Below are positions 32,534 to 59,638 of a stretch of DNA of 64,000 nt, one piece after another. How positions within the stretch are numbered: the stretch's first letter is position 1; each line of letters starts with the position of its first letter. This stretch comes from Magallana gigas. Lineage: Eukaryota. The position numbers were made by a program, and so were the translations under genes. The notes beneath the pieces were generated by a model, which had not been told where the DNA came from, made no database searches, and saw only the letters and a list, made by a program, of their open reading frames with translations. Location of the stretch: positions 50,778,001 to 50,842,000 of the forward strand of contig NC_088859.1 in assembly GCF_963853765.1 (NCBI RefSeq). Direction: 5' to 3'.

Positions 32534-35500
32534 TTAAAAGACATAGTTCCCCATGTTAGCCTGCTCTGACCAGGCTGAGTGTGTCGCGCCGTCCATTTCC
32601 CCGGCCACCTGGTTGTCGGACCGAAGCTGATGTCTGGCCCCACCAATAGTCTCATTGCAATCCGGGCATCTCGATTCTATCAATGCACCCCCGCAGTCTC
32701 CAATACTATATATGTGACCTATAAATGCATGTTTTAGTAGCTGGTAAATTAATTCATTTATTCATGAGTTAAAATAAATACAGCCAATACTTTTACATGT
32801 ATAAACAAGAAATTTGATGTCGCAATTCATAAGGAAGATAAACACATAAAAATCTCACCATTCTTGCACTTGTACCAGTGCCCCTTTTTGCTGTAACTGA
32901 AGGCCTTAAGGATCATCCTTCTCTCCTCATCCGAGATCCCCAGACCAGCCCTTGGATGCTTATCTCGCATGTTTTTCAATGTATCTCTTGTCACTATCAG
33001 GTTCTCATCTGACAATTTTTGGTTTGGCCAAAAGAGCTTATCTCTCTGGTGTTTTATTAATTGCCTTTCTTCCTCTGGCACTTGGTTTTTTGAATCAAGT
33101 TCTCGCATAAGCAAAGTAAAATCAACGAACAAAAAAAGTCTATCTACTTCATAACTGAAATCGTGAACATCGCTTTCTGCAAATACATTATGTTTGTGAC
33201 GCATCAACCATTTTAAGAGGATATGAAATTGTTCTACTATTTCTATTTTATCTATTGACTCCTTGACATCTTTCAGGAATCCTTCGTGGAATTTCGTAAC
33301 AAAAAATATGAACAATTTCTCTGCTTTCTTATTGGAAAAATCAAGCTTGTACGGACAATTAGGAAGTATACTTGTGAGATATTTGACCGCTTTTGCAAAA
33401 TTCAAATTTTCTTCGACAGTCTTTGTTTCTAATTCATTTCTCCTCTCTTTCTCAATAGCTTCTTTTACGTCCTTGATGTTTTTTAAATTCTGGTTTAAAA
33501 CATCTTTATATCTTCGACCTCGTCGTATCGGCGTTTGGCATTTAGGACAACGTATTAATTTAATAACAAAGCTTTCCGGGGTTGAATTCATGTCTTTTTC
33601 TTTCTCCATTTCCATGTATTTGTCGAAATCATTAAATTCAAACACGTGGTGGCAATCCGCTAATTGTATGTACAGGGCGGATGGTTCGTCCTCATTTCCT
33701 AAGAATATAGTCGTCAATTCATCTTTATTGCATCTCCTACAAAGATTGGGACACGGCTCACCACATAAACCTACACAACGATGCCTACAGGGCAATATTT
33801 TTTTGCATCTATTGTTACAACGACTTCTGTCGCATTCCTCGAAACATAACTTCGTACACCGATACTGGTTTTTACAATCTTTATCGCAAATCCAAAGGCA
33901 AGGTTCCCTACAATCAATGCATTTCTCTCCACATTTTTTGGGACATCCACCTTTTGCGAGATGATCGCATCCAGAGGGACAACGTTCATTACAAGGCGGA
34001 CAGATTGTTGAGCAGGAATGTTTACTGTTGCAAGAATGCCCACATACAAGAACTCTTTGACAGAATTCCTCACATACAACATGTAGCCTACCGCTCGAAC
34101 AGGAGCAACAATCACCTTTACAGACATGTCCACAAGGGAGAATGGATTTGCACCGCTGATGGCAACGTTCCTCGTTGAGATTTGAAAGCTTGCAACACTG
34201 CACGCTTATTTCATGGCCACATCTTGGGTGGGTAGCCCGTGTCTTTACGTCGCATTGATCTGGTCGACAGATATTGCCACAGTTTTGTAAGCAGCGGTGA
34301 CCACAAGGATATAGTTTGTCGCATGGCTTTTGACAGGGAATGGTTTCTAGATCTACAGAACAATCCACTTTTACTTCATGTTTACATATGGGGTACACTT
34401 TTAACTTTTTAACGTTACAAGGCCCACACGATTGTGGATGAGAGCATACTTTTTTGCATTTGTGTCCGTTCTTACAAACAATCTTATCACATATTTTTTT
34501 GCATGGCATATCATGGAAAGACCTATCAGCGTGACACTTTAGGTTGCAAACATGACCACATTCATGCTGGAAACCACAAGGCTCATTACAACCTCCTTCT
34601 GGAGCATTGTCAAAATCATCTGGTTTGGAAACCTTTGTTATAGTGTCTGGGTGATTGACACACTGAAGGGGTAGATAGGGTCCACATATTCCATTTGATT
34701 CTGCTTTGGAAATTATCTTATTCCAAGTCTGGCTTTTTCGAATTGTTTGAAAGTTTCCGACTACGTAAAACCCCTGCTTTGCCCTGGAAAGTGAAACACA
34801 AATTCTCTTAATGTCGTGTAGATGTCCAATTTTTTTTTCATCATTTCCTCTAACAAGTGACAATAAGATTATTTCATTTTCTTCTCCTTGAAAATTGTCT
34901 ACTGCCGTAATTGTAACTCTTTGTGTTGCACTATCCTTTGTTTCGGTCAGATTTTTCATATTATCTCTAATTAGTTTTACTTGATCGTTGTAGGTCGAAA
35001 GAATAGTAATTTGTGTTCTGCTATATCCTTGGAGCACTAAATAGCGGAATAGCCCCACAATCATTTTTGCCTCAAATTCATTCATATGACTCGTCGAAAA
35101 TTCTGTCTGACTCTCCGGATGAGTATGATCAAGAAAGTAAATATTGTGTTTAAATCCTCGTACATTCTCATAATTCAAAACACTTGAGTGGTCTTTAAGA
35201 GTCTTGTATATGGTCGGAGTAAGAAGTGAGGAAATTTCTGGGCGCATTCTATGCTGCTGTGACAGACAAACAAATGGCATTCCATTCATTACAAGTCTTT
35301 CCATCATTGACACGTCTGTTTTATGGGATTTGGAGAGCTTGTAATTATTAATAGGCGGTCGCAGTTGTTGGTGATCGCCAATTAAAATCAGATGTTGCAG
35401 GCCCTCAGTGAGACACCCTATAATATGCTGTTCAAAGACTTGGGCCGCCTCTTCTACTACTACAATCCTTGGTTGGACCTGACGAAGGAGGTCAATATTT

Positions 35501-38500
35501 TGTGCAGCTCCTGTTGTTGTCATGCCAACAAGAGAACACGTTGAAACTATTTCTGTATTTTCCATCTGTTTTTCTATCATGTATTTATTATTCTCTACTT
35601 CAAAGTCGTGCATTAGTTCTTTTTTCCTTTGTTCAATTTTGATCCGAAGCTTTTGTATCCACGCCTTGTAGAGTCGCCATCTTTCATCTACTTCAAAAGT
35701 CCATACATCCTGTTTTCTTTCTTCCTCATCTATACTCATTGAAGTGTCTAAACGCAGACGCAGTGATACATGTTTTAAAATTTTTCCCCTTTCTTGCCGG
35801 GTATAAGATCTCCAAAACGGAAACATGTTTCTTTCGTCTTTAGGAAGAATGAGTTCTTCAGAAATAATAAGTTTCGAAAGTACCTTTGAAAGACAATCCT
35901 TTTCGTTGAATACGAAATCATCTGCATCATCAACTATTCTGGTCAGTAATCGAGTTCTCAATATATCTTCATCATCCTCATCAAACCCCAATAGATTGGT
36001 ATTTGAATTGTCATCAACATATGTTCCCCTCGACAATCCTTGAAAATGTCTGTCACAAGCATCTATTTCCAACCATTTTAATACAGTAGCAACATCGTTT
36101 TTTGCTGTGGGTTGATTGCATACACTTTTAATAGATTCAAAAGATTGTTTATGATTTTCAATCATGCAACCTTGTTCGAACAAGAAAGAGGGAGACACAA
36201 TGCTCGTTTTAATTTTATTCAACCACAGCTCAATTTCAAATAAATCTTGTTTAAGTTTCATGGCCTTTTTCAAGTAAATCTTTGAGTTACACGGCTTCAT
36301 TCGTTTTCTATGTTCCGTCAATGTGCATTGCTGAATCCTTTCAACGTTACTTCTCGATCCAACACGAACAAATGGAATTTCTCCAGCTGAAAACAGACCA
36401 AGAAGACTGTCGACATCAAACAGAGCATCGAAAATCTGATCGAGTGCATGATTAGTGTAACTCAGGAGAAGGATTGGCCTTTTCTCAGAATCAACAAACC
36501 CACAATTGTTGTTAAGCAAAAACTGCACGACTCGCAAGCCCATCCATGTTTTTCCTGTTCCAGGGGGTCCCTGCAGGATACCTAGTTTTCTAGTAAGGCA
36601 GAGCTGAAGCGCAGCGTATTGTTGTTCATCCATACCCAACTCTCTTGGTGATGGCCATTCTGTAACATCCATTAATGACACACTATTATAGCTCTTTCCG
36701 GCAATGTCGTTCTGGAGTAAACAATTGAAATTTACATACAAGTCTTCACCATTTTTTCTTTTGCAGTACGCAGGTTCCATAATATTAATCTTCAGCTCCA
36801 CTATATGTTCTGAAAAAGGAATTCTTGCATACTCGGGATTTATATACATCTTCCTTGCTATTGACTTCATTGATTCAAGTGTGTGTCGATATGCAGTGTA
36901 AAAAGCTTTGCTCTCTAGCATGACTATATTCTTATTTGCTTTCTCCATCATTTTTTCAACTGACTGGAAATCGTCTTCAACTAGACTAAGAGAAATCATT
37001 CCTTTATTTAATTTTTTTATGTTTCTTTCGGCAATAAGAGCATATAATAAGACGTTGCATTCACCATACGTTAAACAAACAATGTTTCCGTACTGCAAAA
37101 AATTACAGATATCCCATTGCACTCTCTTCAATCCTTTTGTTTCAAACTGTACTTCAATCACAACACCAGCATTGGGAACGCATTTCCTCTCTAAAATATG
37201 CACACCTTCGTAAGCTCTAATATTTTCATCTCTAAATCTTCTATTTGAGATGCGATCATCACTCGTTACGAAATTTATATAGTTTTGTATCCCTTCACGT
37301 AATGGACCAATAAAATCTTCTAGAAAAAGGTAAAATTGCTCTACAAGATAGTGTGTCTGTGATCTTGATGCTCTTTCTAACTGTCTTGGTTCAAAAATTG
37401 GCAGAATTTTATCTCGAATCATTTCACTTGTCGGTAATATTTTAAAATTCACCAAATTATACAGCTTCTCTCTCAGAGAGTCAGAGAAAGTTGTTTTACC
37501 TTTTTTGCCCGACTCTAACATTCCTTTGATTTCTTTTAGAGATATCGATGATATTGATTTTTTCGAAAGCATTGCGTTCTTTTCCAGTTTTTCAGTCAGG
37601 GAAATTAGCAAACTCAAGAATGTTCGGACCTTTCTTGCCTCTGTTGTGGTTTCCAATGACAGCGCGATCAATACCTCTGATGAATTTCTCAGAAATATTA
37701 TATCAGGGCCGCTTAATTCACGACATAATAATTCTGTAATATATGCCATTAGTTCCTTTTTATTAAAAACATCATTTTCTAGTAATTTTTCGCACAACTC
37801 AGTGTTGCACTCCTGCAAAAGATGACTTAAAATTTTCATTAAACACCATAGATTTTCTTTGCTGAAACTCTCAGCTGACCCAAGTAAAGACTTGAAATCT
37901 TCGTATTCTCCATCTTGAAAATCTTTGATATTTTTTATTCTTTCAAAGCGCTTTAATAAGTTATCTCTACTTTCTAGAAATCCATAGTTTCGAAAATCGT
38001 TAACGCGATACGTAAGAGTGTTACAGTTTTTCTTGGCATTCGTGCAGATTCTTTCTCTGCGTTTTGGTCCCTGGTCTTTTTTACTTGCTTTGTAATCATC
38101 GTTTTCATCCATATGCAATCTCCTTTTACCTTTAAATTGTTCTGAACTTTTTCGATTTGAGTTCGATGATTCACCATCATGAAGCTGTTTGTTGTATTGT
38201 AACCCATTTCTTGTTGAATTTCTCTGCCTTCCCGGATAACGATCAGAGGATGAGAGGTCTGATGGATTATAACCACTGGTTGTTCTCGTCCTACCGATTT
38301 GGTGGTTTTCATAGGTAGCTGACTTTGACATGGTTTCATTGTCGTAAGTAGTTGCTCTTGGTGAGCCAGGTGTCTCCCGAGAATAAATTTGAATACGGTT
38401 ATTGGACCAAACATTGTTTGTTGGTTTCGTAGGTATATCACGCCTTTGTGTATTTGTGTTTCCAGTCCATTCTTCTGGCCTCCTTCTTTTTGCAGAGTGT

Positions 38501-38550
38501 ATATCATATTCATGATTCCGTGTCCGTTTATTTGTTGTGTTTCCCCACAT
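32534..38550 (-). CDS. ZNFX1: NFX1-type zinc finger-containing protein 1 (ZNFX1 copy 1), ~1958 aa, intact RZ finger
   Basis: Exons 38550-32859 and 32718-32534. SF1 helicase motifs QGPPGTGKT, SYTNHALD, VEEAAQV, GDHQQLRP, QHRMRP, VDNFQGEE, VSLSRAK; NFX1-type Cys/His repeats; CHH...CPKC...RY; C-terminus GHWYKCKNGHIYSIGDCGGALIESRCPDCNETIGG...EMDGATHSAWS. Confidence 0.95.
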
Positions 38551-38842
38551 ACTCGTTTTCTATGGTTTGTAAACCAAGTGATGGAACGTCATGTTAAAGA
38601 AAGATCTAAAATAATTAAAATGCAATAACATGTATGAATTGTTTGGCTAAACAAAGACTCTTAAAGTCAATCTTAACAACTTATTTAAACATCTTAGAGT
38701 ATAAATGAATTGATTTTTCGCCTTATTCCATGTAATCTGTTTAAAAATTGTAATCATTATAACCATTATTTTCTAAACTTTGTAGTTTTTATCGTTCCTG
38801 ATATTGGTCCAGTAGATCCTGGGAAGACAAATATATGATAAA

Positions 38843-41800: not shown

Positions 41801-42570
41801 CATAAACAAAAACATTTAAGGTAGCATATTGTATAGAACATTTTTTTGAGCAACTTTTGTTCTGCAATGCTTTTCAAAATATTTCTCCTTTTTCATATAT
41901 TAATGATCAAAGTTTATCATTCAGTAAAGAATTATTGTAAGAAGACATTACAGCCCCTTTGGTCCCTAATTTGAGGGACCAGCCCCTTTTTCTTGATTTC
42001 AAATGAAGGCCCGTGCAAATAGAAACAACTTTTGCATTACATATTTTAACAAAATATGTACACATCGAAAGGTATTACAGAAAACGTGCAAAAAGTTCGT
42101 TGAAAAATTTGGTGCTAAATTTCAGGTTCAGCGAGCTTTGAGGCCTTGAGCAATTTTCATAATTGGAAGCATGGGGGTACATCTACAGATATTCATCTAC
42201 AATCCCTGAAAATTTCAAGCTTCTATCTTGATTAGTTTCGGAGGAGATGGATGGACAAAATGACCCTTAAAAATTTACAAAATCGTAAATATCTGAAACC
42301 GGAAGTGACGTCAACAAAAAATGTAAGAAAAAACATTTATCCCCTCTGATGTCCTATAAGTCCTGAAAATTTGGTGCAAATCGGGCGAATAGTTTTCGTG
42401 AAATAAAGCTTTAAAGAAGGCAGAAAAAGAATGTTAAGAATAATAATAATAGAAAGAAACAGTAGAAAAACAAGAGGGTCTTCCGTCGAAAACGGAAGAC
42501 CCTAAATAATAAAGAAAAAGAAACCGTAGAATAACAAGAGGGTCTTCCGTTGGAAACGGAAGACCCTAAT
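38843..42570 (-). mobile_element. Helentron-like HINE (outer element) with ~437-bp internal tandem repeats
   Basis: 5' sub-TIR TAGGGTCTTCCGTTTCCAACGGAAGACCCT at ~42570. 3' AACGGAAGACCC followed by the hairpin CTCGTTGC-TTT-GCAACGAG and CTAGT at ~38843. Repeats at 39343, 39780, 40217. Confidence 0.8.
40700..42505 (-). mobile_element. Helentron-like HINE (inner element) nested in the T-rich 5' region of the outer copy
   Basis: A second 5' sub-TIR at ~42475-42505 and the same 3' hairpin at 40700-40745. Repeats at 41212, 41648, 41961. Confidence 0.8.
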
Positions 42571-42750
42571 TACCATTCTGCCATTAATACAATCAGAAGG
42601 GAAAACTGGTCACTTTAAGTTCAGGTGAGCTAAAACTGATTACTCCTCATTAAAGCAATGTAAGAAGCATTGTTAATGTTTACGGTTCGCAACCGTAGTT
42701 TATCGATTTTAATACGTATTTCTTTCTTTGGCAATGGTTAATAGGTACTG

Positions 42751-43090
42751 TTAGGTTCAGACGACACGTTCCTTAAAAAAATGATAATTATTTTTTCAAA
42801 TTTTCAACGGCCTGATAATATATAAACTAAAATTATAATTATCTATTATCATTTTTGAAATGATTTAAGTTTTAAAAATATTTTATATTTATGCCAACAA
42901 ATTTTATATCAGCAACTCAAGTGTATTTTCATAAAGATTATACAGGGAATCGCATTCTCTAGTATCTTACACAAATGCCTGGTAAGGTACCCTTAATTTT
43001 TGCAAGAAAGCTTGTCAAAGTTGAAGTAAATCAATAACATATTCCTGGAAAAAAATATATAAATTGAGGAACGTGTCGTCTGACCTTTAA
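42751..43090. mobile_element. MITE (TCAGACGACACGTTCCT TIR; TTAA on the right)
   Basis: GGTTCAGACGACACGTTCCT ... AGGAACGTGTCGTCTGACCTTTAA. Confidence 0.75.
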
Positions 43091-43296
43091 AAAATGTACA
43101 ACCCGCAATTTAGATCAATGCAATTATTCAACAATAGTAATCCAAATAGATTGTGGTGTCTTGTTTGTATAGCTATTATTGTTCTTTTTTACTTACTTTT
43201 GTAATCCATTTCCCAAGCTAAATCATTGCACACTTCAGGAGTGACTTTGGTTTGTATGGCAACAAGAAACTTTATATTGTCCTGTAAAATGTGTAT

Positions 43297-43372
43297 AGTT
43301 TCGATTTCAGTTCTAGGAAAGCAGTTGTTGACGAATTTCTGAAAACCTCAATTCAACTTTAGTTTCGATTTT
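43297..43372. promoter_or_regulatory. Two ISRE/IRF-element-like motifs between divergent ZNFX1 copies
   Basis: AGTTTCGATTTC at 43297-43308 (matches AGTTTCNNTTTC) and AGTTTCGATTTT at 43361-43372. Confidence 0.55.
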
Positions 43373-47200: not shown

Positions 47201-50189
47201 AAGGTATGAAACATAACATATTTTGTGTCAATCATCAAAATTTTGAGAATCAATCGGAATTTTCTACAAGTTATACAAATGATTTTGAGGCTGATATGAT
47301 AGCTCAGCTTTACAAATACTTAATATTGCAAGGATATTCCAATGCAGATATCACCATTTTATCTGCATATAATGACCAAGTTAGAAAGATCAGAAGGAAA
47401 GTGACTGAAATTTCGAAAACAATTAGAGTAAGTGAGAGAAGGTTGGAATCAAGAGTTCATATCACAGCGGTTGACAATTTTCAGGGAGAAGAAAATAGAA
47501 TAATTCTGCTTTCACTTGTAAGAAGCAATTTGGAATGGAAATTAGGTCATCTAGGTGATCCTCAAAGAATTTGTGTTTCTTTGTCAAGAGCAAAAGAAGG
47601 ATTATATATATTTGGAAATTTTGAAATGATTGATAATCGCAAAAATATGTTATGGATGGAAATAATAAAAACTGCGAAAGAAATTGGCGTATTTGGTGAA
47701 AACATATCTCTAGTTTGTCAAAATCATCCAAAAACAATCACAAAAGTGTCCACTCCTCAGGATTTTGGGAAAGTTCCTGATGGTGGATGTACTGAACTGT
47801 GTGCAACCCAGCTGCAGTGTGGACACGTCTGTGAAAGGCAATGTCACGGTGATGATTCGATTCACAACCTTCTATGTCAAAAGCCATGTTTGAAGATAGT
47901 ATGTGAAAGTAATCATCCTTGTCCAAAAAAATGTCATGAAGAATGTGGTAAGTGCATGACAAAGGTGATGAAAAAGTTTGATATATGTAAACATGAAGTT
48001 GAAGTTCCTTGTTTTGTGGATCCTGCATCTACTCCATGCCCAGTTAAGTGTACAAAGACGCGGTCATGTGGACATCCTTGTACCTTGAAATGTGGTCAGA
48101 GTTGTGATAAATTACCATGTACAGAGAGATGTTTGGAAATATTATGTGACAGTGGACATCCATGTCCAAAGAAATGCCATGAAGAATGTGGAAAGTGTAT
48201 GACAAAAGTGATGAAAAGGTTTGATTCATGTGGACATGAATTGAAAGTACATTGCTATTTAGATCTTGCATCTATTTCATGCCCAGTTAAGTGTACCAGA
48301 ACACGACAGTGTGGACATCTTTGTACTTTGAAATGTGGTCAAAGTTGTGATCAAGTTCCATGTATGGAAACGTGTTTGAAAATGGTATGTGATAGTAAAC
48401 ATCCCTGTCCGAAAAAATGTCATGAAGATTGTGGGAAGTGTTCGAAAATGGTTACGAAAAAGTATAGTAATTGTGGACATGAAAATGAGATACCTTGTTG
48501 GATGGATCCTGCATTTGTTCCATGTAAAGCCGAGTGTTCCAAGAAACTACAGTGTGGACATCCTTGTACTTCAAAATGTGGTCAAAGTTGTGATGATGAT
48601 CTATGTAAAGTTATGATACAGAATATGCATCCACAATGTCGTCACATAACAATAATTAAATGTTACAAAAAAGATGAATATATCTGTCGAAAAAAATGTA
48701 CAGAAATTCTTGAGTGTGGACATCCATGTCAAGGGAATTGCCATGCGTGTTCGAATGGTAGATTACACGTACCCTGTAAAGAAAAGTGTACACGTACACT
48801 TGTTTGTGGACATGCTTGCAGTGATTTTTGTTGGAACCCCTGTCCCCCGTGTTCGAAAAGATGCGAAAGAGGATGTGTGCATAAAAGAAACGGCTGTAGT
48901 CATTTATGTAAAAATCTGTGTGAACCATGTGAAGAAATGTCAAATTGGATTTGCTATGATGAATGTGAAAATGAATTTCGTGGTAGTGAAAAGTGTCATA
49001 AAGACTACGTCCGGCCCCCTTGCAATAAACGATGCAAGAAATCGTTGATATGTAAACCTAATCACAGATGTATTGGATTGTGTGGGGAAAATTGCCCATC
49101 CATCTGTAAAAGATGTGACAAGAAAAAACTAACAAATATCCTTAGAGCAAAAAGCGTTGATGACTCGCTTGTCGTACAACTCATAGACTGTGGACACATA
49201 TTTAAGGTCGATACAATGGATGAGTATATGCGTTTGTATCCAGAACATTTCATTTTGGACGAAAAGATGGCATTAAAAACATGTCTTGAATGCTCGACAC
49301 CCATAAGAAGTAGTGGGCGATACAAAAACGTCATCAATCAAACATACAGTGATATTGTGGAAGTAAATCGGAAATGTAAAGTTGAAACAAACAACTTGTT
49401 TTTAAAACAATATAAAATTCAGAGAAATGTCCTCGATAAAGACATGCCACTCAAAGAACGGATTGCCTGTTGTCGCAACAGATATGTTAGAGCTGTTTGT
49501 AAAAGAGTCTTGAACAAGTTATGCCGAAGGTATAAAGCGATTCTTGCAATGGATGAACAATATAATATTAGGGAAATAACAAAAACTTACAATGTTATAT
49601 TTGACTGGATTTTTCATCATTCAAATGTTACTTTTGTTCACGAGGAACTCGAGCAGTTGAATGATGAGGTGGAGAGATTTTCGATGTATATTGACCTTGT
49701 GTTACTGAAACATGTCTGGGAAATCATTCTACCTCAAACCGAAAAGGACCTTATTCAATATCATTTATTGAAACTCCGATGCCCAGATGGCGATACCTTT
49801 AACCGTGGCGATGTTGTGTCAGCTCAGGCAGTATTTGATAAGATACGAGAAAAGCATTGTCTGTGGATGCCTGTTAGAGAAAGAAGAATGTCATTCAAAG
49901 ATGTGGTTTGCGGAAAACGAGGAAACTGGTATAAATGTAGCAAAGGTAAGCTTTATTATGACCTTAAATTAAAAGGAAAGATGACTATAGATAGTTCTTG
50001 TAACTGAATTATATTTGATTGGATCATGTGTGGAATACTACAGTGTAAATAATATGTATGAAATCTTATCCAGGTCACATCTACCTGAGCGAAGTTGGCG
50101 GTTCAGTTGATGATCCAAGATGCCCTGATTGTCTGTCACCTAAAGAAGATGGTCTACCCCTACATGAAGAAGAGATGGAGGTGGCTTGA
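44284..50189 (+). CDS. ZNFX1: ZNFX1 copy 2, ~1925 aa, expanded zinc-finger array, degenerate RZ finger
   Basis: Exons 44284-49945 and 50074-50189. All helicase motifs present. C-terminus GNWYKCSKGHIYLSEVGGSVDDPRCPDCLSPKEDGLPLHEEEMEVA*. Confidence 0.93.
47880..48610 (+). repeat. 243-bp (81-aa) coding tandem repeat, 3 copies, in ZNFX1 copy 2
   Basis: CPKKCHE starts at 47920, 48163 and 48406. Confidence 0.92.
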
Positions 50190-53034
50190 GGCACGACACG
50201 GCTTGAAAGCGGAGTTACCGTTGTATTTTTTTTTTTAGGAATTGTGGCGAGGAATTGGTTTGTAAATTCGATTATCGATTAACTTTTGATTGTTTTATGC
50301 ATATCAATAGATTATAACTGTAAACTAGATATCATTTGTACGAGATTTAGTATCACAATTTTGTACAATTAATTATTTTGTAGATTTGAATCAGAGGAAC
50401 AGAATGTATTCAATATGTATTTATTGTGGGTTTCAATTCATTTTAATGAAAGATTTATCAATTTTTTCATAACAAGACTATATTAATTATGCAAATCTGA
50501 CAAATAATGATATTGCATTTAAAGAAAAGAACCGTGTAAAAAAACCAAATCTTGATTTGAGTTTTTTTTGGTGGTTTGTATCTGAGTTATTTCTTTTTAT
50601 CATTTTAAACTCTGTAGCTCTTGATGTTTTACATTTTTGTTTTCTTGTCCCTTAAGGCTTGTTTGGATTTGTGGTAAATGAAAACAATAGTATACAGAGT
50701 TGTTTCTGTCGGTACGTCTTATGATTTTTGTATTCGATCGTATGTATCATATTGTGTCAAAAAATACACAGGGTGAAAATAACATATTTCAAATTTTATC
50801 CAGATGTATTAAAGTTAGGAAGTAGTAATTGTGCTGTCGTAAAATTCAGTAATGTTTCGGATGCCACTTGATCGTCGAATTTAAGTAACGTTGCTTTCGT
50901 GTCACGTGACTGTCTTGTAGATACTGTTGGTTCCTGAGGATGAGAGAGGTAAAACTGGTGTGGTGTGGTTGCTGAGTACGCATGTGTGACTGTTGATATG
51001 CATACCTTTGCACTAATTGTGCAATTTATTCTATGATGTTACCTATTACGATATGTTCTCCTGTGAGAAATACTTCACAGCAGTTTTCCTAGTAGGAATT
51101 TTATAACGAAATCTTTTGATTCCTCTGATAAGGGATAATTCCGTATTTATTTTAATTATTGAAATTAAATAAGTAATACTGTGTGAGTGAGTTTGATTTT
51201 TATTTTTAGGTCACCTTAATTTACTTTACGTTTCTTTAATAATCAATCTTTTGAACTTTTATCAATAGAGTTACGACACATTATTTTAAACTTTGTGGCT
51301 TATTTAGTTTTCTTGTTCTGTAAGGCGTTTGTGAATTTGTATCTTTCAAAGACAATGGTAAACAGGAATGTTTCAGATTGATTGATGACCATCTAGGTTT
51401 GCTGTTTATTTGACAATACTTATTTTCGTACATTGCTAAACGAGTATGTAGAAAATATTAACTGTATTGATGTATTGGTGACATTGAAGAGTATTTTTTT
51501 TTACAATACTTTATTACTTTGTATTGCTAAAGGCAGTATTGAGAAAATATTACACACTTATTGCTTTGTAGAACATATGAATGTGAATTTTTAAAAAAAT
51601 CTTGAACAATACATTTTAAAAGAGTGTGCCTTGATTTTGTTATTAAAAAAGTTTGTAATGACACTATCTTAAGTCTTAATCGGGTACAGGATGTAAGACA
51701 ACCAACGGATTTGTACTATATTGAACTAAGTAGATGATCAGTAGGTTTTGGTTGATTGAAGTTTAATTAGGAAACAAGTTTTATAGTTTTATTATCATTT
51801 CATTAAATATTCAGTAAAAGCAATAGTGACCCATTAAAGGCTTGGTGATTTTGAAACAGGTCACTTATATAGATATGAAGTGCACTGCTGGGTTCGTCAA
51901 TTTATCAACTGTTATTCCATGATGAAATTATAAAAATAATTAATGAATAGGTCCTAAAAATAAATATGAACAATGATAGATATATGACAATTATCGGTGT
52001 ATAAATTATATTCCATGAATATAATTTTAAAAATATTGAATAAATGGATTGTAGTTTTAAATTAAAGTCCAGTCTTTATTTATTATACATTTACACATCT
52101 TTACTATCTAACAATGTAAAAATGACCAGAGACACCTAAATACTTTTAAAACAAACATTGCAGCCGGTGATCAAAATGTACACAACAACAAAAAGATTGA
52201 ACTATGATATGTATTAGCTTTTTAGTTTAATATCCTGCACTATAAATACTTTATAGCAACAAATAACACTAAATTGTTTTATATTATTTTTATTTTACAA
52301 ATATAACAAATAAACCACTGTGGTTATGCGAACAATAAACAGGTTTGATAAGGTAGATTTTCTGGTAGCTGTAGAACCGTAGCGCTACGGGAAATTCGGT
52401 TTGACAGAAAAACTGCAGTTCCACCCATAAAAAATAGCTGTATCTTCAATCGCACAAAAAGTTTCAAACGGTTTAATTGGACTTTTCAAAATAATAAAGG
52501 AATATATTGTCTTTTAGATCATTATTTTCTATAGATAATATAATATCAATAATGAAATAAAATTTCTAGATTTAATGAAAAAGTATCTTTTGTAAAGACG
52601 ATATTGGTTTATATCTGCGTGGTGATTTGCTTGTTTTCTGACATATCTAAGCAGTATTTATATGGCAGTCATTACTTTCGATGTTCTTTTAACATGATAA
52701 GCAAATATTTTTAAGCGTAAATTAAAAATAAAATTAAACATTAATTATTTTTTTTTAAGTGGAGGGGCAAATCCATGGTAAGTCGATTTTCTATGTATAA
52801 ATTGACAAAAATGAAAAAAAATTTAGCATGGGGGGAGCTCTCTGATGAGTCAAGTTTTATATGTAAGTTTAAGAAAAAATGTCTACTCCAAAAAAAGGGG
52901 GAAATCAATCAATCAATCATAATCACAATCACTTTAAAAGAGGAGATACAGTGCAATGAATATTTATATATTAACATCTTTATTATTTAACAACATTGTA
53001 TCTGAGATTAAACTATTGTTCTACATATAAATAA

Positions 53035-53208: not shown

Positions 53209-53730
53209 TACAATATATTTATCTTTAAAGTACTGTTGAAGGTGTGTGTAACATCAATAGTGTAAACTTTTTATTTAAAACATACCATGCTTAGTCGTTG
53301 AGTACTGTTCGTCCGCCTTTTCATAAAAACAACAATCCATGACAGTGTGAGAACCTGTACTTTTTCTGGCCTTTTGACAAAATTGCAAATACTTCTTTTA
53401 GCTTGTCAGTTACACTTTTTGGCATATAAACGTTCATGTGTGTCGTATTCATTTTCTAATTTCAATGGACTACAGTAGCTTTTCTATATTCAAAACTCGT
53501 TACAATTCCAATAATGCCAATCTTTCTATTAAAAGAAGAATGAAATTTATCTTAAAGTCCAAATCAAAATGGAAACATATATTTCAATATTGTTGTTAAG
53601 ATAGAGCGCATGGCATTAAACTTAAAAAAAGGGTTTTGTTATTTTAAATTGATTTAATTTAATATGTAATTTAATAGTAGGAAATATATCAAACCTAGTT
53701 CGATTTATCGTTCAGGTAAATAGCTAAAGA

Positions 53731-56700
53731 ATGGGGAAAAGGAAGAGAACATGGTCGGATAATTACCAAAGCTGTTCAAAACGATATCGAAAGGAAGAAT
53801 TTACAAATTTTCGACAATTCATTCATGAAGCTCCAGATGCATTGCGACAAATCAAAGGTACAAAGCGTGTCTGCAGTCATAGGGATTTATTGGCAATATT
53901 ACAGTCATGCACTCAAGAAACGTCAATAAAAATGGTGGACTGTTCAAGCGAACTAACAAAAGTTGATAGCACGCTTTATGAAAGGAATAATTTAGAGAGT
54001 GGCGATATCATATGGATTATCAATATCTTAGCATCTGCAATTAATGACCAACCGGAGCTAGTGTGTTCTATTATTGAAAGAAGTAACTTTTTTGAAAGAT
54101 CAGATGTTTCAGGGATGGTCTTAAAAAGTGCAGCAACAGACTGCTATAAATTAAAAGGCTGGACAAAAGACTTTATCACTTTATTGGTGTCCGTACCAAG
54201 GCAATATACAAGTAAAAACATGTTCTTTAAAACTATTTTTAGACTTCTATCAAAATCAGAATGCATTAATGATTCTTTAGTAATAGAAGAGATAATAAAA
54301 ACCTTCAGAAATCTGAAAGTCAAAGAGAAGGATATTCAGGATGACAGCCAAACACAATTACCTGCACCTGGATGCATTGAAGACATATTGTGTGATTTGA
54401 TAACATGGACAATTTTTCCAACAAGAGAAATGGTGGTCAATGACAAATATCCGCCACGATGGCCACGCGACTTGAAAACGTTGCGTATTCCCTATGTAAA
54501 TTCTGCCCATTATCTAATGGAGCAGTTCAGTATGTTTCTGGAAGATTTCATTGGCCCACTGCGCAAAGGGATCCAGAACTTTATCAAATACGCACAGTCA
54601 AAACAACCACAAGGCAGATTCAGGGATAAAGATATTTGGATTTATAAAAGAGTTTGTCTACTTGGTAACAAATGCATCGAAGGTTCGGGCGTTTGTCTAG
54701 AAGTGCAGTTTGATACCAGTACCATGAAAAAAATGCGTTGGGGTGCCAATAAACGTTTGCAATACGGAAACGTAGTATGCTTAACAGTGGATGACTCTTC
54801 CGAGTTAATATACGCACTAGTTGCTAATCGGGATCTGAAACAACTGACGGAAGGAAGAACCTTTCTGAAAATACTCGAGGAGAATCCAGATATCATACAT
54901 AAGTTTAGACGGATGCATACATCTCGACTTGTGATGATTGAGGGCAAATCTTTTTTTGAAACGTACAATCACACGTTAAAATCTTTGCAAAATTTAGCTA
55001 TGAAAATGTTAGGCGGGAATGAAAACATACCATTTGCCAAATATTTCGTTAACCTCAATTCTGAAGTTTTGGAACCACTTTACATGCAAAGTAAGAACAA
55101 TGAAGAAATCACATTAGACTTTTCATGTCTAGTGCACACCGAACAGAACTTTTCTACTTTATATAAAAAAGTACCAATTTTGGAAGTTGAAAAATGGCCA
55201 ACACGAGAGGAAATGTATCTTAATGAGGATCAATATGAGGCACTCAAGAAATGTTTGACGAAGGAAGTTGGTATCCTTCAAGGCCCCCCAGGCACTGGAA
55301 AAACTTGGATGGGAGTACGGATTGTGGAATTTCTTATAAATAACTTTAGAAATATGTTCGACATTGCAGAAAGACGGCCAATTTTATTGCTTAGTCATAC
55401 AAATCATGCACTTGATCAGTTCTTTGCGAAGTTGTTGGAATTGAAGAGCATTAAACGTATTTTAGCACAAATGGGTTATAGGAAACCGTTTGTGAGAGTC
55501 GGACAGCGGTGTGGAAATGAACAAGTAATGGAATATTCAATAAATGCACATAGAAAACAATATAGGCAGAACACTAAATATTGGTCTGGTACGCTGAAGG
55601 AAATGCGAAAATCTCTAAAATCTGTGGATTACATAGACACTTTACTGGAATTCTTACAGGAGGGTATAGTGTCTGTTGATTTTCTAAAATCTGAGGAAAT
55701 TATATTACAGAAACATATTTTTTCCTTGACACACAATCCGTCCTTCGTTCCCAAAAACAATGGAATATTAGGTACTTGGTTAGGAATAAATGAGAATGAA
55801 GTTCGATACAATCACGGAAACGAAACACAGGCAGTTGATAGAACAGAAATGGAATTAGACAATATGTTTCCGCAGGAAACTGAAAGAAAATTCTTGGACG
55901 ATAATGACAAAAATGAAGTTGCAAAAAGGAACATTTTAAAAGCCATTAGCCCTCTTTTTGTTCTTTCCCGCTTACATTTTCTGCCAAATGAATATCACAT
56001 GCTCCAAAAAAGTAAACGCTCTGCGTTTGCATATATACGTAATATGCTTAGAAATCAGAATGACTTTATGCCTGATGAAACGGTGAGACGTTTAGAAAAT
56101 GTTTGGGATTTGAAATACAAAGACCGTTGGAGACTTTACAAGTTTTGGATTCGGAATATTACGTTCAAATTGAAAAATCGTAGGAAGCACATCGTAGAAT
56201 TATTCAATGAACGTGACAAAGCGGTTCAGATTGAACGTTTCGAACAAGATTTAGAAATCCTCACGTCAAGTTTAATGGTTGGTATGACAACAACTGGTGC
56301 TGCATTAAATATGAAACTTCTGAGAGAAATACAGCCACGTATTGTGGTTGTAGAGGAAGCAGCGCAAGTTCACGAACAACACATTATTGGATGTCTGACT
56401 AAAGAATTGCAACATCTAATTTTGATAGGCGACCACCAGCAACTCCGTCCAGCTATGAACAATTATGATTTAAAACAATCCCATAAAACGGATGTTTCAT
56501 TGATGGAGAGGTTGGTGATGAATAAGTTCCCCTTTCACTGTTTGACTTGTCAACACAGAATGAGACCCGAGATCTCCCGAATGCTGACTCCAGCCATTTA
56601 CCCAACACTCAAAAACCATTCGTCCGTTCTGTCCTACCAAAATATCAAAGGTATGAAGCATAACTTATTCTTTATGAATCACCAATATTTAGAGAATCAA

Positions 56701-59638
56701 ACGAAGTTTTCTACAAGTTATACAAATGACTTTGAGGCTGATATGATAGCTCAGCTTTACAAATACCTAATATTGCAAGGATATTCTAACGCTGATATTA
56801 CCATTTTATCTGCATATAATGATCAAGTTAAAAAAATCAGAAGGAACGTGGCTGAAATTTCACAAGGAATTCGAGTAAGTGAAGAAAGGTTGCAGCAGAG
56901 GGTTCAAATCACAACAGTTGACAATTTTCAAGGGGAAGAAAACAGAATTATTTTGCAATCGCTTGTTCGAAGCAATAAGAAGTGCATATTAGGTCATCTT
57001 TCCGATTCTTTGAGAATTTGCGTTTCATTGTCAAGAGCGAAAGAGGGAATGTATCTAATTGGAAATTTTGAAATGCTTAATAATGGTAGCGATGGTTTAT
57101 GGAAGAAAATGATCAAAAAAGCAAACGAAAGTGGAATGTTTGGGGAAAGCTTGTTGCTAGTATGTCAAAATCATTCAGAAACGATCACCGAAGTGTCTAC
57201 TCCTCAAGATTTTGAGAAAGTTCCAGACGGCGGGTGTATTGAGCCATGTGCAACCAAACTGCAGTGTGGGCACGACTGTGACAGACGATGTCACGGCGAT
57301 GAATCGATTCACAACCTTCCATGTCAAAGGCCATGCTTGAAGATCTGTGATAGTGGACATCTTTGTCCAAAAAAATGTTACAAAGAATGCGATGATTGTA
57401 TGACAAAAGTGATGAAAAAGCATCGGACTTGTGAACATGCAGTAGAAATACCTTGTTGTAGAGATCCTTCATTAACGTCATGCCGCTTTGATTGTGCCAG
57501 AGAACTCCAGTGCGGACATCCTTGTACCTTGCTATGTGACCAAAGTTGTGATGATTGCATTTGCAAAGTTTTGATAAACATTGTTCCCACACAATGTCAT
57601 CACAAAACAAAAATTGAATGTTACAAAAAGGATAGATATATCTGTCAGAAAAAATGTACAGAAATTCTTCCATGTGGCCATCGCTGCAAAGGAGATTGCC
57701 ATCAATGCTCAAATGGAAGATTGCACATTCCTTGTAAGGAAATGTGTGAAAAAACACTAGTTTGTGGACATCGTTGCAGAGATTTTTGCTGGAATCCATG
57801 CCCTCCATGTACGGAAAACTGCGACAGGGGTTGTATTCATAAAATAAATAGATTTGATCATTTATGTAAAAACGTGTGCGAGTCATGTGAAGAAATGTGT
57901 GACTGGAAGTGTTATGATGAATGCGAAAATAGATTTGCTTGTTCTGCAAAATGTTTCGAGGACTGTAGGAGACCCCCTTGTGAAAAAAGATGCAAAAAGT
58001 CGTTGGAATGTAGCCCCAATCATAGGTGTATTGGGTTGTGTGGTGAAAACTGTCCTAAAAAGTGCAAAAGATGTGACAGAAATGAATTAAGCAATTGTGT
58101 CGAATCAAAAAACATTGACAATTCTCTATTTATAGAACTCATAAAATGTGGACATGTATTTGAGGTTGAGACAATGGACACTCATATGAATCTGCACTCA
58201 AAAGACGATTCCTGTAGAGACAAACAGGTTGCATTAAAAAAATGCCCACGATGTTCGACGCCTATAAAAAGAAGTGGGCGATACAAAGTTGTTATTAATC
58301 AAGCATATCGGGATCTAATGAATGTAAATCGAAAATGTGAAGAAATGACAAATAATCTATTTTCTTACGAACATCTTTCTTTAAATGCACAAAACAAGGT
58401 ACAACGTCCCATTCATTTAGACGTTAATGCAGGTCCATTGGCCGCTGAACAATGGCGTAACAAACATGTCAAAACTGTCCTCCAAACTTTTTACAAGAAA
58501 GGAAACCCTCGAAAAAAAGAACTTCTTATTATCAGTGACCGTTCCTTTCTTCTGGAAATTGAAAATTCCTTTGATGTTCTATCGAAATGGATTTTACATC
58601 ATTCTGATATATGTTTTACTCAAAAGGAACTCGAACAATTGACTGATGAGTTGGAAAGGCTTTTGATGTATGCTGACTTGATATTACTGAAATTCAAAGA
58701 AAAAAGTATCTTATCTCAAAGTGAACTTGACATAATAGAGTCTAACTTATCAAAACTCCGATGTCCAGATGTCACTACCTTCAATCGTGGCGATATTGTG
58801 TCAGCTCAGTCAGTAGTTGATGAGATAAGAAGAATGCATGGTATTTCGTGTCAGTGGATGCTTGAAGAAGACAGAAGAATGTCATTCAAAGATGTGGTTT
58901 GTGGAAAACACGGAAACTGGTACAAATGTACCAAAGGTGAGTTTGTAATAAAATTCCATTCCGTCAATTTATTTTTGATAAATAGACTAGTACATTTTTT
59001 CATATATGATACATAGAGATACATATTATATAACAGCGAAGAATAATTGATATGTTAGAGAAAAGATATGAAATTTTATTTTATAACATGTACTCTCCTC
59101 TTGTTTAAACTGGAGAAAATGACAAGACTAGAATGTCTAACCTAGATTTGTAATTAAGCAATTCTTTTATCCACTCAAAGTTCTTGAACACTCGCATAGT
59201 TTTTAACATTATCATTCGTATAAAATGCTAAATTCCTTTGGGCTTTTGTTTGCCCTGCGTTTTAACCAGAGGCAATAGTAAAGGCGGTTCAAAACAGAAT
59301 CCGTGATTTTTTTTTCTAATGAATTTGTGTATTTTAAACACAAAAATAATCAGGAAACCGAAATACAACTATGTTGAATTAATTAAGCAAACAGTGATGG
59401 AAACAGAAACAGCTTATATAAAGTCCTATGACAAAAATGAATATAGCTTCTTTTAATTAGTAATAAAAAGTAGTTAGTGTGTTAAATTTGGCAACAGAAA
59501 ACTATTAAATTCGAAATCAATCCAGCAGGTCATATCTACTTGAGTGAAGTAGCCGGTACAGTTGACGATCCAAGATGCCCTGACTGCCTATCATCTGAAG
59601 GCGACTCTCCTTCCGAGGAAGAAATGGAGGTGGCCTAA
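53731..59638 (+). CDS. ZNFX1: ZNFX1 copy 3, ~1771 aa, degenerate RZ finger
   Basis: Exons 53731-58936 and 59529-59638. All helicase motifs present. C-terminus GNWYKCTKGHIYLSEVAGTVDDPRCPDCLSSEGDSPSEEEMEVA*. Confidence 0.93.

What the first reader, a model, noticed from the sequence alone, without database searches (positions are those of the whole stretch)
32534..59638. ZNFX1 trio: one RZ-intact copy and two copies that specifically lost the RZ reactive cysteine (possible active/pseudo-ligase antiviral set)
Seen: copy 1 ends C-KNG-H-IYSIGD-C-GGALIESR-C-PD-C plus the long EMDGA..W tail. Copies 2 and 3 read C-xKG-H-IYLSEV(G/A)G(S/T)VDDPR-C-PD-C, keeping the C,H,C,C positions but lacking the middle G-D/E-C-G Cys. 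They also have a 1-aa shortening and a short acidic EEEMEVA tail. All helicase motifs and the upstream C-x-H...C-x-x-C...RY domain remain, and the 5.2-5.7 kb ORFs are open, so these do not look like decaying pseudogenes. Established (recalled): in RNF213 and mammalian ZNFX1 that middle RZ Cys is the ubiquitin-accepting residue, and ZNFX1 is an RNA-sensing antiviral helicase. Inference: copies 2 and 3 are RNA-binding helicases without RZ ligase activity, acting as decoys, regulators or sensor partners of copy 1, analogous to LGP2 versus RIG-I/MDA5.
Basis: partly seen in the sequence, partly recalled or inferred. Interest (0 to 1): 0.78.

Follow-up and report, generated by a model that had tools for sequence, protein, structure and literature searches.

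The report
Oyster ZNFX1 cluster with RZ-dead paralogues
Three neighbouring antiviral-type RNA-helicase genes (ZNFX1 family) of the Pacific oyster: one keeps the complete ubiquitin-ligase "RZ" finger, and the other two belong to an old oyster-specific sister lineage, under purifying selection, in which that finger is reduced to a zinc-binding stump without its catalytic residues.

Summary
The window is Magallana (Crassostrea) gigas: the joined exons of copy B equal XP_034312822.2 exactly.

- **Copy A (minus strand):** a canonical ZNFX1 with all four zinc ligands, the nucleophile Cys, the general-base His, the ubiquitin-helix Ile and the conserved tail.
- **Copies B and C (plus strand, tandem):** these keep only the C-H-C-C zinc ligands.
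- **Second ligase domain:** in M. gigas the E2-contact Phe and the linchpin Gln of the Z-RING/Miz domain are also gone.

A and B/C are not recent copies (37-40% identity). They are sister clades, each present in Ostrea, Saccostrea, Crassostrea and Magallana, so the loss is old and stably inherited. dN/dS is about 0.25-0.30, against 0.33 for A. Helicase motifs are intact.

Transcript contigs confirm the last-exon splice of A and B. No other RZ exon exists in the window. A and B are transcribed head-to-head, with their 5' exons 444 bp apart. Copy C has an open frame but I found no transcript or database protein for it.

"Ligase-dead partner or regulator" is plausible but unproven. Natural RZ-less ZNFX1 is already known in C. 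elegans, and short Cys-less fingers are common in cnidarian ZNFX1-like proteins. I rate this a new variant of a known kind.

The parts
32534..38605 (-). Gene A, canonical ZNFX1 orthologue. Main exon 32859-38605 (ATG at 38550), last intron 32719-32858, last exon CDS 32534-32718. Product 1958 aa.
   Evidence: ORF and splice sites. The fully spliced transcript L008 is 99.7% identical. The protein is 99.4% identical to Logan protein P0252. Pfam finds the ZNFX1 domain plus AAA_11/AAA_12. Best PDB match is 9q9z.
42568..43251 (-). Alternative 5'UTR exons of gene A, at 43197-43251 and 42568-42821.
   Evidence: L008 bases 1-55 and L007 bases 1-254 match these stretches at 100% and are spliced onto the main exon.
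34753..36633 (-). Gene A SF1 helicase core (aa 640-1266).
   Evidence: Pfam AAA_11 and AAA_12. Motifs I, II, III, V and VI are intact.
33508..33741 (-). Gene A Z-RING/Miz domain (aa 1604-1681). The zinc ligands and the linchpin Gln are kept. The E2-contact Phe position holds Leu.
   Evidence: Alignment to numbering proxies P0180 and P0221.
32630..32877 (-). Gene A complete RZ finger, split by the last intron. It has the C, H, C, C zinc ligands, the nucleophile Cys and the general-base His. The conserved tail follows, down to 32537.
   Evidence: Pfam PF20173 at 83.7 bits. RNF213 RZ match at E=7e-8. Spacing as. Coordinates.
43252..43695 (.). 444-bp interval between the outermost 5' exons of A (-) and B (+), a putative bidirectional promoter. 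It holds the window's only two copies of an 11-mer, at 43297-43307 and 43361-43371 (- strand).
   Evidence: Transcript ends. The 11-mer occurs 2 times against 0.08 expected. Its ISRE-like reading rests on a pattern recalled from memory and is only a lead.
43696..50429 (+). Gene B, RZ-dead paralogue. 5'UTR exon 43696-43756, main exon 44236-49945 (ATG at 44284), intron 49946-50073, last exon 50074-50189 (CDS), 3'UTR to at least 50429. Product 1925 aa.
   Evidence: Transcript L001. Protein 100% identical to XP_034312822.2. Pfam. Best PDB match 9q9z.
45778..47619 (+). Gene B SF1 helicase core (aa 499-1112).
   Evidence: Pfam. Motifs intact.
47885..48594 (+). Gene B tandem repeat, 243 nt (81 aa) x 2.9, inside the Cys/His-rich zinc-finger stalk. 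It accounts for most of B being about 154 aa longer than C.
   Evidence: TRF. Overlapping BLASTP pieces for B against C.
49105..49323 (+). Gene B Z-RING/Miz-like domain (aa 1608-1680). The zinc ligands and RY are kept. The E2-contact Phe position is deleted, the acidic loop is replaced, and the linchpin Gln is Ser.
   Evidence: The AF2 model gives pLDDT 80-88 here.
49927..50132 (+). Gene B RZ remnant, split by the intron. It keeps the C-H-C-C zinc ligands only, has Gly at the nucleophile position and a loop one residue shorter. A short acidic tail follows, to 50186.
   Evidence: AF2 pLDDT is 41-64 with only one beta-hairpin, against a confident sandwich in the canonical control.
53731..59638 (+). 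Gene C, second RZ-dead paralogue. Main exon CDS 53731-58936, intron 58937-59528, last exon CDS 59529-59638. Product 1771 aa. The 3'UTR probably runs to about 60626.
   Evidence: ORF and splice sites. Pfam. The last exon plus 3'UTR are 99.5% identical to transcript L006. No database protein or contig matches C's own N-terminal part.
58063..58284 (+). Gene C Z-RING/Miz-like domain (aa 1445-1518), with the same changes as in B (Val then a gap at the Phe pair, linchpin Ser).
58918..59587 (+). Gene C RZ remnant, split by the 592-nt intron. It keeps the C-H-C-C ligands and has Ala at the nucleophile position.

Best explanation
This is a cluster of three ZNFX1-family SF1 RNA-helicase genes of the Pacific oyster. 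Gene A is the oyster's canonical ZNFX1. It has the helicase, the zinc-finger stalk, the Z-RING/Miz E2-binding domain and a complete RZ finger, so it should run both ubiquitin routes described for human ZNFX1.

Genes B and C belong to a sister clade. That clade arose from an A-like gene before the living oyster genera diverged. In every member the RZ domain has been cut down to its C-H-C-C zinc knuckle, and the nucleophile Cys, the general-base His, the ubiquitin-helix Ile and the distal strands are gone. These proteins therefore cannot form the RZ~ubiquitin thioester. In human ZNFX1 that thioester builds the K48 chains that drive the protein's own turnover.

B and C keep an intact ATP-binding and RNA-binding helicase, the ARM/ZNFX1 domain and the stalk, which are the parts through which ZNFX1 polymerises.

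Most likely mechanism (inferred): B is induced together with A and binds RNA like A. It acts as a transthiolation-dead subunit, probably longer-lived, of the same RNA-trapping assemblies. Any ubiquitin on it or made by it would come from its own weakened Z-RING or from A acting in trans. The ratio of A to B would then set how much of the response is self-limiting.

What is shown and what is inferred:
- Shown: the sequence losses, their age, purifying selection, the splicing and transcription of A and B, and the head-to-head arrangement.
- Inferred: every biochemical consequence, any co-assembly with A, and any role for C.
For: Family membership: Pfam ZNFX1 plus AAA_11/AAA_12 in all three. Best PDB hit is human ZNFX1 9q9z at E=1.6e-188 (A) and 1.5e-180 (B).

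A is canonical: RZ at 83.7 bits, RNF213 RZ at E=7e-8, canonical spacing and tail.

B and C have a dead RZ: a truncated, borderline RZ match and no RNF213 hit. The Cys, His and Ile equivalents are absent, with residue roles taken. AF2 gives one low-confidence hairpin (pLDDT 41-64). A canonical control run through the same pipeline gives a helix plus beta-sandwich at pLDDT 71-90.

Old and retained: an NJ tree gives 100% bootstrap for an all-oyster clade and for each subclade. Both subclades hold Magallana, C. virginica, Saccostrea and Ostrea, and all ten B/C-clade sequences aligned lack the Cys and His.

Selection: omega is 0.25-0.30 in the B/C clade against 0.33 in A. The finger is the best-conserved segment between M. 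gigas B and C. virginica, at 79-82% against 54-56% overall. Helicase motifs are intact.

Expression and splicing: B equals the RefSeq protein and spliced Logan contigs exist. There is no alternative canonical RZ exon in the window.

Co-regulation lead: the 5' exons of A and B are 444 bp apart on opposite strands, with a duplicated 11-mer between them.

Mechanistic frame: human C1860A is more stable, loses K48 chains and shifts flux to the K63 route. ZNFX1 ubiquitylates itself in trans within polymers.
Against: - No activity, binding or protein-level data exist for any oyster copy.
- The state of the Z-RING in B and C is ambiguous. The zinc ligands, the RY and a neighbouring hydrophobic residue remain, but the Phe1575 position is a gap and Gln1623 is Ser. 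The alignment around that gap is uncertain.
- The C-terminal 75 codons evolve faster in close comparisons, with omega 0.5-0.8 on few substitutions. Outside Crassostrea and Magallana the finger loop is not conserved, at 42-43%.
- dN/dS is pairwise Nei-Gojobori, the trees are NJ only, and the source species of the Logan contigs are unknown.
- Copy C has no matching protein or contig on record. It carries 4 changes at otherwise family-invariant columns, against 1 for B and 0 for A.
- Co-expression of A and B is inferred from gene arrangement only.
- Foldseek gave no significant hit for either model, so it is uninformative.
Confidence: 0.55

Rival explanations
1. Self-sufficient Z-RING-only effectors. 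B and C still recruit an E2 through their Z-RING/Miz-like domain and act on their own as one-route ligases. These would be K63-biased, RNA-entrapping, non-self-degrading ZNFX1 variants that do not need A.
For: Human ZNFX1 lacking RZ activity stays an active ligase through the Miz/Z-RING, becomes more stable and sends more flux down the K63 route. C. elegans ZNFX-1 lacks RZ altogether. B and C keep the Z-RING zinc ligands, the RY and a hydrophobic residue beside the lost Phe. The region is modelled at pLDDT 80-88 and gives weak RING-domain matches. The Ostrea edulis B/C-clade member keeps the canonical IFFG..E..DA loop.
Against: In M. gigas, C. virginica and Saccostrea the Phe1575 position is a gap, Asn, Ser or Pro. 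In human ZNFX1, F1575A/N/E abolishes E2 binding and all activity. The linchpin Gln is Ser, Phe or Glu and the acidic loop is replaced.
Confidence: 0.2
2. B and C are pure decoys or negative regulators, comparable to LGP2 beside RIG-I/MDA5. They bind the same RNAs or cap A polymers without contributing any ubiquitin signal, and so dampen the response.
For: Helicase motifs are intact while both E3 modules are altered. The lineage is kept by selection. B sits next to A and is divergently transcribed from it.
Against: Nothing in the sequence distinguishes dampening from amplifying. The zinc knuckle, stalk and Z-RING scaffold have been conserved across four oyster genera, which is more than a simple RNA sponge would need. 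The LGP2 comparison is an analogy, not homology.
Confidence: 0.12
3. Neofunctionalisation away from antiviral defence. The B/C clade would work in an RZ-independent RNA pathway, such as the small-RNA or germ-granule roles known for the RZ-less C. elegans ZNFX-1.
For: There is precedent for an RZ-less ZNFX1 that traps RNAs in granules. The two clades have been separate for a long time.
Against: No tissue data are at hand. B shares its promoter interval with A. ZNFX1 genes are induced by OsHV-1 in oyster, although the paralogue was not specified.
Confidence: 0.06
4. Decay. B and C are pseudogenes in the making and the altered finger is simply damage.
For: For C only: no protein or contig on record, slightly more changes at invariant columns, and no copy of the promoter 11-mer upstream of it.
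Against: The frames are open over 5.3-5.8 kb. Omega is 0.25-0.30, like A. All helicase motifs are intact. Counterparts with the same loss exist in four genera. B is transcribed, spliced and annotated.
Confidence: 0.04
5. Annotation artefact. The real last exon of B and C is another one that carries the Cys.
For: None was found.
Against: Transcript contigs L001, L004, L005 and L006 and the RefSeq protein all use the short exon. tblastn with A's last exon finds only the three known last exons in the window.
Confidence: 0.02

Closest known systems
Vertebrate ZNFX1 (human ZNFX1; PDB 9q9z)
   Same: It has the same architecture: ARM/ZNFX1 domain, SF1 helicase, Cys/His stalk, Z-RING/Miz and RZ. Gene A shares every catalytic and zinc-binding residue of the RZ and the C-terminal tail, and is 37-39% identical over the last 600 aa.
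   Different: B and C lack the RZ nucleophile, base, ubiquitin-helix Ile, distal strands and tail, and have a changed Z-RING E2 loop and linchpin. In A the E2-contact Phe is Leu.
C. elegans ZNFX-1 (RZ-less ZNFX1)
   Same: It is a natural ZNFX1 without RZ ligase chemistry, thought to rely on the Miz domain and to trap RNA in granules.
   Different: The nematode protein is stated to lack the RZ entirely and is not described as having an RZ-intact partner. The oyster clade keeps a conserved zinc-knuckle remnant and sits beside, and head-to-head with, an RZ-intact paralogue. I did not examine the nematode sequence here.
RNF213 RZ finger
   Same: A's finger aligns to it, with Cys and His in register, at E=7e-8. 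It belongs to the same Pfam family, PF20173.
   Different: B's finger gives no RNF213 match. RNF213 is an AAA protein, not an SF1 helicase.
Cnidarian ZNFX1-like expansions (Montipora, Stylophora, Oculina, Porites and unnamed metagenome proteins)
   Same: They end in a short C-H-C-C finger without the canonical Cys/His spacing. This holds for 104 of the 112 non-oyster hits of the B search, and none of the 112 is canonical. Further unnamed examples appear among the 50%-identity representatives.
   Different: They are about 2,500 aa long and fall outside the oyster clade in the tree. The resemblance to B and C is therefore parallel, not inherited. Their loops differ.
LGP2 beside RIG-I/MDA5
   Same: The logic is the same: a helicase paralogue that retains RNA binding but lacks the signalling or effector module of its relatives.
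   Different: It is an unrelated SF2 family with a different missing module (CARDs). This is an analogy only, recalled from general knowledge and not tested here.

Membership tests
ZNFX1 family | UPF1-like SF1 helicase core with intact ATP-binding and RNA-binding motifs | tested here: met
   AAA_11 and AAA_12 in A, B and C. Motifs I, II, III, V and VI are conserved.
ZNFX1 family | N-terminal ZNFX1/ARM domain (PF25396) | tested here: met
   73.9, 84.2 and 79.8 bits against a cut-off of 27.
ZNFX1 family | Closest solved relative is ZNFX1, with the match running through the zinc-finger stalk | tested here: met
   9q9z at E=1.6e-188 (A) and 1.5e-180 (B), aligned to about chain residue 1450. C was not searched against the PDB. 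Pfam's NF-X1 finger model itself was not detected in any copy, and it is also absent from the precomputed lists of vertebrate ZNFX1.
ZNFX1 family | Z-RING/Miz domain: zinc ligands C-x-H...C-x-x-C...RY | tested here: met
   Present in A, B, C and all oyster relatives.
ZNFX1 Z-RING as an active E2-binding module | E2-contact Phe1575 and linchpin Gln1623 (human numbering) | tested here: inconclusive
   A has Leu and Gln. B has a gap and Ser. C has a gap and Ser. A hydrophobic residue remains next to the gap. Leu also occurs in a relative with a canonical RZ.
RZ finger (PF20173), structural | Four zinc ligands C, H, C, C | tested here: met
   Kept in A, B, C and all ten B/C-clade sequences aligned.
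RZ finger (PF20173), structural | Full-length domain match (helix plus beta-sandwich) | tested here: not met
   This applies to B and C, which cover only profile positions 7-38 and 7-40 of 54 at 28.1 and 27.0 bits. AF2 gives a single hairpin at pLDDT 41-64. A meets the feature (83.7 bits, positions 5-53), and a canonical control fragment folds confidently.
RZ finger as a transthiolating E3 | Nucleophile Cys (human C1860, RNF213 C4516) | tested here: not met
   This applies to B (Gly) and C (Ala), which also have a one-residue deletion. A meets the feature.
RZ finger as a transthiolating E3 | General-base His (human H1881) and ubiquitin-binding helix Ile (human I1835) | tested here: not met
   In B and C the His column falls in the replaced tail, and the Ile is Ser. 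A meets both.
LGP2-like regulatory paralogue (functional analogy) | Binds the same ligands or partners as the active paralogue and modulates its output | not testable with these tools
   Only arrangement and sequence are available: head-to-head with A and an intact helicase.

The most novel reading that the evidence does not exclude
Oysters have split the two-route ubiquitin circuit of ZNFX1 across two co-regulated genes. A is the full bimodal ligase. B is a transthiolation-dead subunit, possibly ligase-dead altogether, expressed from the same bidirectional promoter. The two would co-polymerise on RNA, so the A:B ratio would set the balance between persistent RNA entrapment and self-destruction of the assembly. 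Retention of A's last intron, which yields an RZ-less A isoform, might add to this balance. The short Cys-less fingers of cnidarian ZNFX1-like proteins would be independent versions of the same solution, which would make the RZ remnant an unrecognised domain subtype.
Probability: 0.15. Interest if true: 0.75.

Novelty: new variant of a known kind. Interest (0 to 1): 0.5.

Why it matters
ZNFX1 was recognised only in 2025-2026 as a helicase with two ubiquitin-ligase routes. In human ZNFX1 the RZ cysteine builds the K48 chains that drive the protein's own turnover.

The oyster B/C clade looks like a natural version of the laboratory C1860 and delta-RZ mutants. It is found in all four oyster genera sampled and sits next to the intact gene. 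This gives a comparative handle on three questions:
- what the RZ route is for;
- which parts of the C-terminal module matter without catalysis (the zinc knuckle, the helical linker, the Z-RING scaffold);
- how invertebrates that lack interferon tune an RNA-trapping defence.

It also matters for practice. Oyster studies that report "ZNFX1" induction by OsHV-1 pool genes that probably differ in biochemistry. Paralogue-resolved analysis is therefore needed.

Tried and rejected
- **Recent-duplicate idea:** rejected. A against B/C is 37-40% identical, and the two are separate clades in four genera.
- **Ancient shared origin of B/C with the coral short-finger proteins:** suggested by the first search and rejected by the trees. 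Oyster A plus B/C are monophyletic at 100%. They also share oyster-only features (RYK and an extra residue before the finger).
- **Alternative canonical RZ exon:** none in the window.
- **Foldseek of the B-cluster C-terminal model against the PDB:** no significant hit. The canonical control was equally blank. The method was insensitive here, and only weak RING-domain matches appeared in both.
- **Pfam search for NF-X1 fingers or a MIZ model in the stalk and Z-RING at lax thresholds:** nothing.
- **Exact look-up of C's ORF:** not on record. A search with C's first 500 aa found nothing closer than 54%.
- **Blasi et al. 2022 survey of metazoan ZNFX1:** not held. I cannot say whether it noted the short-finger paralogues. 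Full-text searches found no paper describing them.
- **tRNA and Rfam scans of the window:** empty.
- **Species of the Logan runs:** these could not be determined.

Full report
**What is there.** The span holds three very long open frames: 32827-38550 on the minus strand, and 44284-50007 and 53731-59016 on the plus strand. Each frame runs out a few codons after a C-x-x-G motif. A canonical GT...AG intron sits in the same phase-1 position of that Gly codon in all three. Behind it lies a short last exon that continues with H-I-Y. Joining the exons as they stand gives proteins of 1958 aa (A), 1925 aa (B) and 1771 aa (C), each with one terminal stop.

**Organism and gene models.** The joined B protein is identical over all 1925 residues to XP_034312822.2/XP_034312823.2, [quoted passage not shown]. 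It is 98.8% identical to the Crassostrea angulata protein. The window is therefore Pacific oyster.

Intron-less Logan contigs confirm the splices:
- L001 is B-like (95% nt). It skips 49946-50073 exactly and adds a 5'UTR exon at 43696-43756.
- L004 and L005 do the same in more distant relatives of B.
- L008 is 99.7% identical to A. It skips 32719-32858 and starts with a 5'UTR exon at 43197-43251.

tblastn with A's last exon finds only the three known last exons. No hidden canonical exon lies behind B or C in this window.

**The fingers.** Two 2025 preprints define the residues for human ZNFX1:

| Role | Human residue(s) |
|---|---|
| Zinc ligands of RZ | C1849, H1853, C1869, C1872 |
| RZ nucleophile | C1860 |
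| General base | H1881 |
| Ubiquitin-binding helix | I1835 |
| Second E3 domain (Miz or Z-RING): E2 contact | F1575 |
| Second E3 domain: linchpin | Q1623 |

Two 1918-aa mammalian proteins returned by my search carry exactly these residues at these numbers. I used them as rulers.

Copy A has all seven RZ-related residues with the canonical spacing, and the conserved tail. It scores 83.7 bits on Pfam RZ across the whole model. It aligns to the RZ of RNF213 at E=7e-8 with Cys and His in register. Of 119 relatives found with A's C-terminal region, 114 share the spacing. The five exceptions are three unspliced read-throughs, one truncated model and one abalone protein.

Copies B and C keep the four zinc ligands. 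They differ from A as follows:
- Gly or Ala sits at the nucleophile position.
- The loop is one residue shorter.
- There is no His in register.
- Ser replaces the helix Ile.
- About 18 acidic residues replace the distal half of the domain and the tail.

B and C scrape the Pfam threshold (28.1 and 27.0 bits against 27) over the first two-thirds of the model only. B has no RNF213 match.

AlphaFold2 was run on a B-cluster C-terminal fragment. It models the Z-RING (pLDDT 80-88) and a long helical linker (80-93) well. The remnant appears as a single hairpin at pLDDT 41-64. A canonical fragment run the same way gives a helix plus a multi-strand sandwich at pLDDT 71-90.

**The second ligase domain.** Its zinc ligands and RY are kept everywhere. 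A has Leu for the E2-contact Phe, as does one relative with a canonical RZ, and it keeps the Gln linchpin.

In the B/C clade the conserved I-F-F-G-x-E-D-E-x-D-A loop is replaced, as follows:

| Lineage | State of the Phe1575 position or loop |
|---|---|
| Magallana | gap |
| C. virginica | Asn |
| Saccostrea | Ser or Pro |
| Ostrea edulis | canonical loop retained |

The linchpin in this clade is Ser, Phe or Glu.

In human ZNFX1, F1575A/N/E removes E2 binding and all activity. The oyster changes could therefore mean a fully ligase-dead protein. However, a hydrophobic residue remains beside the gap and the alignment there is uncertain. I leave this open.

**Age and relationships.** A is only 37-40% identical to B and C, and B is 59% identical to C. 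A's C-terminal region is as close to vertebrate ZNFX1 (37-39%) as to B (34%).

Neighbour-joining trees on about 1,600 columns put all oyster sequences in one clade (100% bootstrap). That clade splits into an A clade and a B/C clade, each at 100%. Each contains Magallana, Crassostrea virginica, Saccostrea and Ostrea. The duplication and the RZ loss therefore predate the divergence of these genera, and both genes have been kept in all of them. All ten B/C-clade sequences aligned lack the Cys and His and keep the four ligands.

The search with B's C-terminus against 1.84 billion representatives found only six proteins below 1e-30, all oyster-like or fragments.

**Selection.** Pairwise Nei-Gojobori dN/dS values are as follows:

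| Comparison | dN/dS |
|---|---|
| B against three transcript-derived relatives | 0.25-0.29 |
| B against C (dS 0.96) | 0.27 |
| A against its relative | 0.33 |

By region, the helicase and ZNFX1 domain are the most constrained (0.07-0.26). The last 75 codons give 0.25 in the deep B-C comparison but 0.5-0.8 in close pairs with few substitutions.

Between M. gigas B and C. virginica the 28-residue finger is 79-82% identical, against 54-56% overall. Against Saccostrea and Ostrea it drops to 42-43%, with only the ligands held.

Helicase motifs I, II, III, V and VI are unchanged in all copies. These are not decaying genes.

**Arrangement.** A and B are head-to-head. The outermost 5' exon of A ends at 43251 (minus strand), and that of B starts at 43696 (plus strand), 444 bp away. 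That interval holds the window's only two copies of an 11-mer, at 43297-43307 and 43361-43371, against 0.08 expected. C lies 3.3 kb downstream of B on the same strand.

**Copy C.** Its frame is open and its domains are intact. Its exact ORF is not on record. A search with its first 500 residues found nothing above 54% identity among 5.8 billion clusters, although B's protein is there. That search sees only proteins of 0.55-1.75 times the query's length. C has 4 changes at otherwise family-invariant columns, against 1 for B and 0 for A.

What is abundant in transcript assemblies is a mosaic relative (P0004/P0270, contig L006). It is B-like (about 81% nt) for most of its length. It is 99.5-100% identical to C from about 58,290 through the last exon and 3'UTR. 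In the 1841-aa members C's intron is read through as well. This copy is not in the window. I treat C's expression as unproven.

**How it most likely works.** In human ZNFX1 the Z-RING route makes K63 chains that drive aggregation and RNA entrapment. The RZ route makes K48 chains that drive turnover. C1860A is more stable, and removing the RZ sends more flux down the K63 route. Protomers ubiquitylate each other in trans within polymers nucleated by the ARM domain and the stalk.

B and C keep the helicase, ARM and stalk but cannot form the RZ thioester. The best-supported reading is a transthiolation-dead subunit or variant of the same RNA-trapping machinery, probably longer-lived. Its ubiquitin would come from a weakened Z-RING of its own or from A.

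Sequence alone does not separate them.

**Comparison with what is known.** Natural loss of RZ is reported for C. elegans. Short terminal C-H-C-C fingers without the catalytic pair end 104 of the 112 non-oyster hits of the B search. Those hits are mostly coral proteins, and none of the 112 is canonical. More such fingers appear among unnamed representatives and in an abalone protein.

I found no paper describing these remnants or an intact/dead paralogue pair. The one survey of metazoan ZNFX1 is not held. ZNFX1 genes are induced by OsHV-1 in oyster and by low salinity, without paralogue resolution.

Only the 11-mer read off the window should be relied on, and its regulatory meaning is a lead only.
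- In my reasoning I also recalled a short chaperone C-terminal motif when looking at the acidic tail.
- The consensus lines printed by the alignment tool were not used.

**Verdict.** I rate this a new variant of a known kind, of moderate interest.

Noticed in passing
window 32719-32858 (last intron of gene A); locus L007: Transcript L007 (ERR13986109) has its 3.7-kb 5'UTR intron removed but retains the 139-nt last intron. This gives a 1907-aa product that stops just after the first RZ zinc ligand. Among the listed full-length members of A's protein cluster, 11 are this read-through form and 3 are spliced. Intron retention could therefore yield an RZ-less isoform of the canonical gene.
   Followed up: partly
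window 43252-43695: A and B are transcribed divergently, with their 5' exons 444 bp apart. The window's only two copies of an 11-mer lie here, at 43297-43307 and 43361-43371 (expected 0.08).
   Followed up: partly
window 47885-48594: A tandem repeat of 243 nt (81 aa) x 2.9 lies inside the Cys/His-rich stalk of gene B. It lengthens the stalk relative to C.
   Followed up: partly
locus L006; window about 58290-60626: An abundant transcript-derived paralogue or allele (P0004/P0270) is B-like for about 1,700 aa and then 99.5-100% identical to gene C. The identity starts at the end of the Z-RING and runs through the last exon and 3'UTR. This points to recombination or gene conversion that moves the linker-plus-remnant module between copies. 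It is not present in the window or among named NCBI proteins.
   Followed up: partly
window 53731-59638 (gene C): No protein closer than 54% to C's first 500 residues was found in the 5.8-billion-cluster collection, and its exact ORF is not on record. It may be silent, rare or haplotype-specific.
   Followed up: partly
proteins P0009-P0120, P0126, P0335-P0425 (related loci, not the window): Of the 112 non-oyster hits of the B search, 104 end in a short C-H-C-C finger and none has the canonical RZ spacing. These hits are mostly coral ZNFX1-like proteins of about 2,500 aa. Similar fingers occur in an abalone protein and in unnamed representatives.
   Followed up: partly
protein P0436 (Ostrea edulis, B/C clade): This member has the dead RZ remnant but still carries the canonical Z-RING E2 loop with the Phe. 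The RZ was therefore lost before the Z-RING loop changed in the other genera.
   Followed up: partly
window 22122-23213 (+) and 19851-20837 (+): There is an intronless rhodopsin-family GPCR ORF (7tm_1, 95 bits). Upstream of it is an ORF with a KY-like immunoglobulin-like domain.
   Followed up: no
window 39274-40283 and about 42000-42432: A 437-bp unit is repeated 2.3 times in tandem between A and B. A further copy at 84% identity lies nearer to B. It is probably a dispersed repeat.
   Followed up: no
window 4934-5608: A 20-bp minisatellite with about 35 copies.
   Followed up: no
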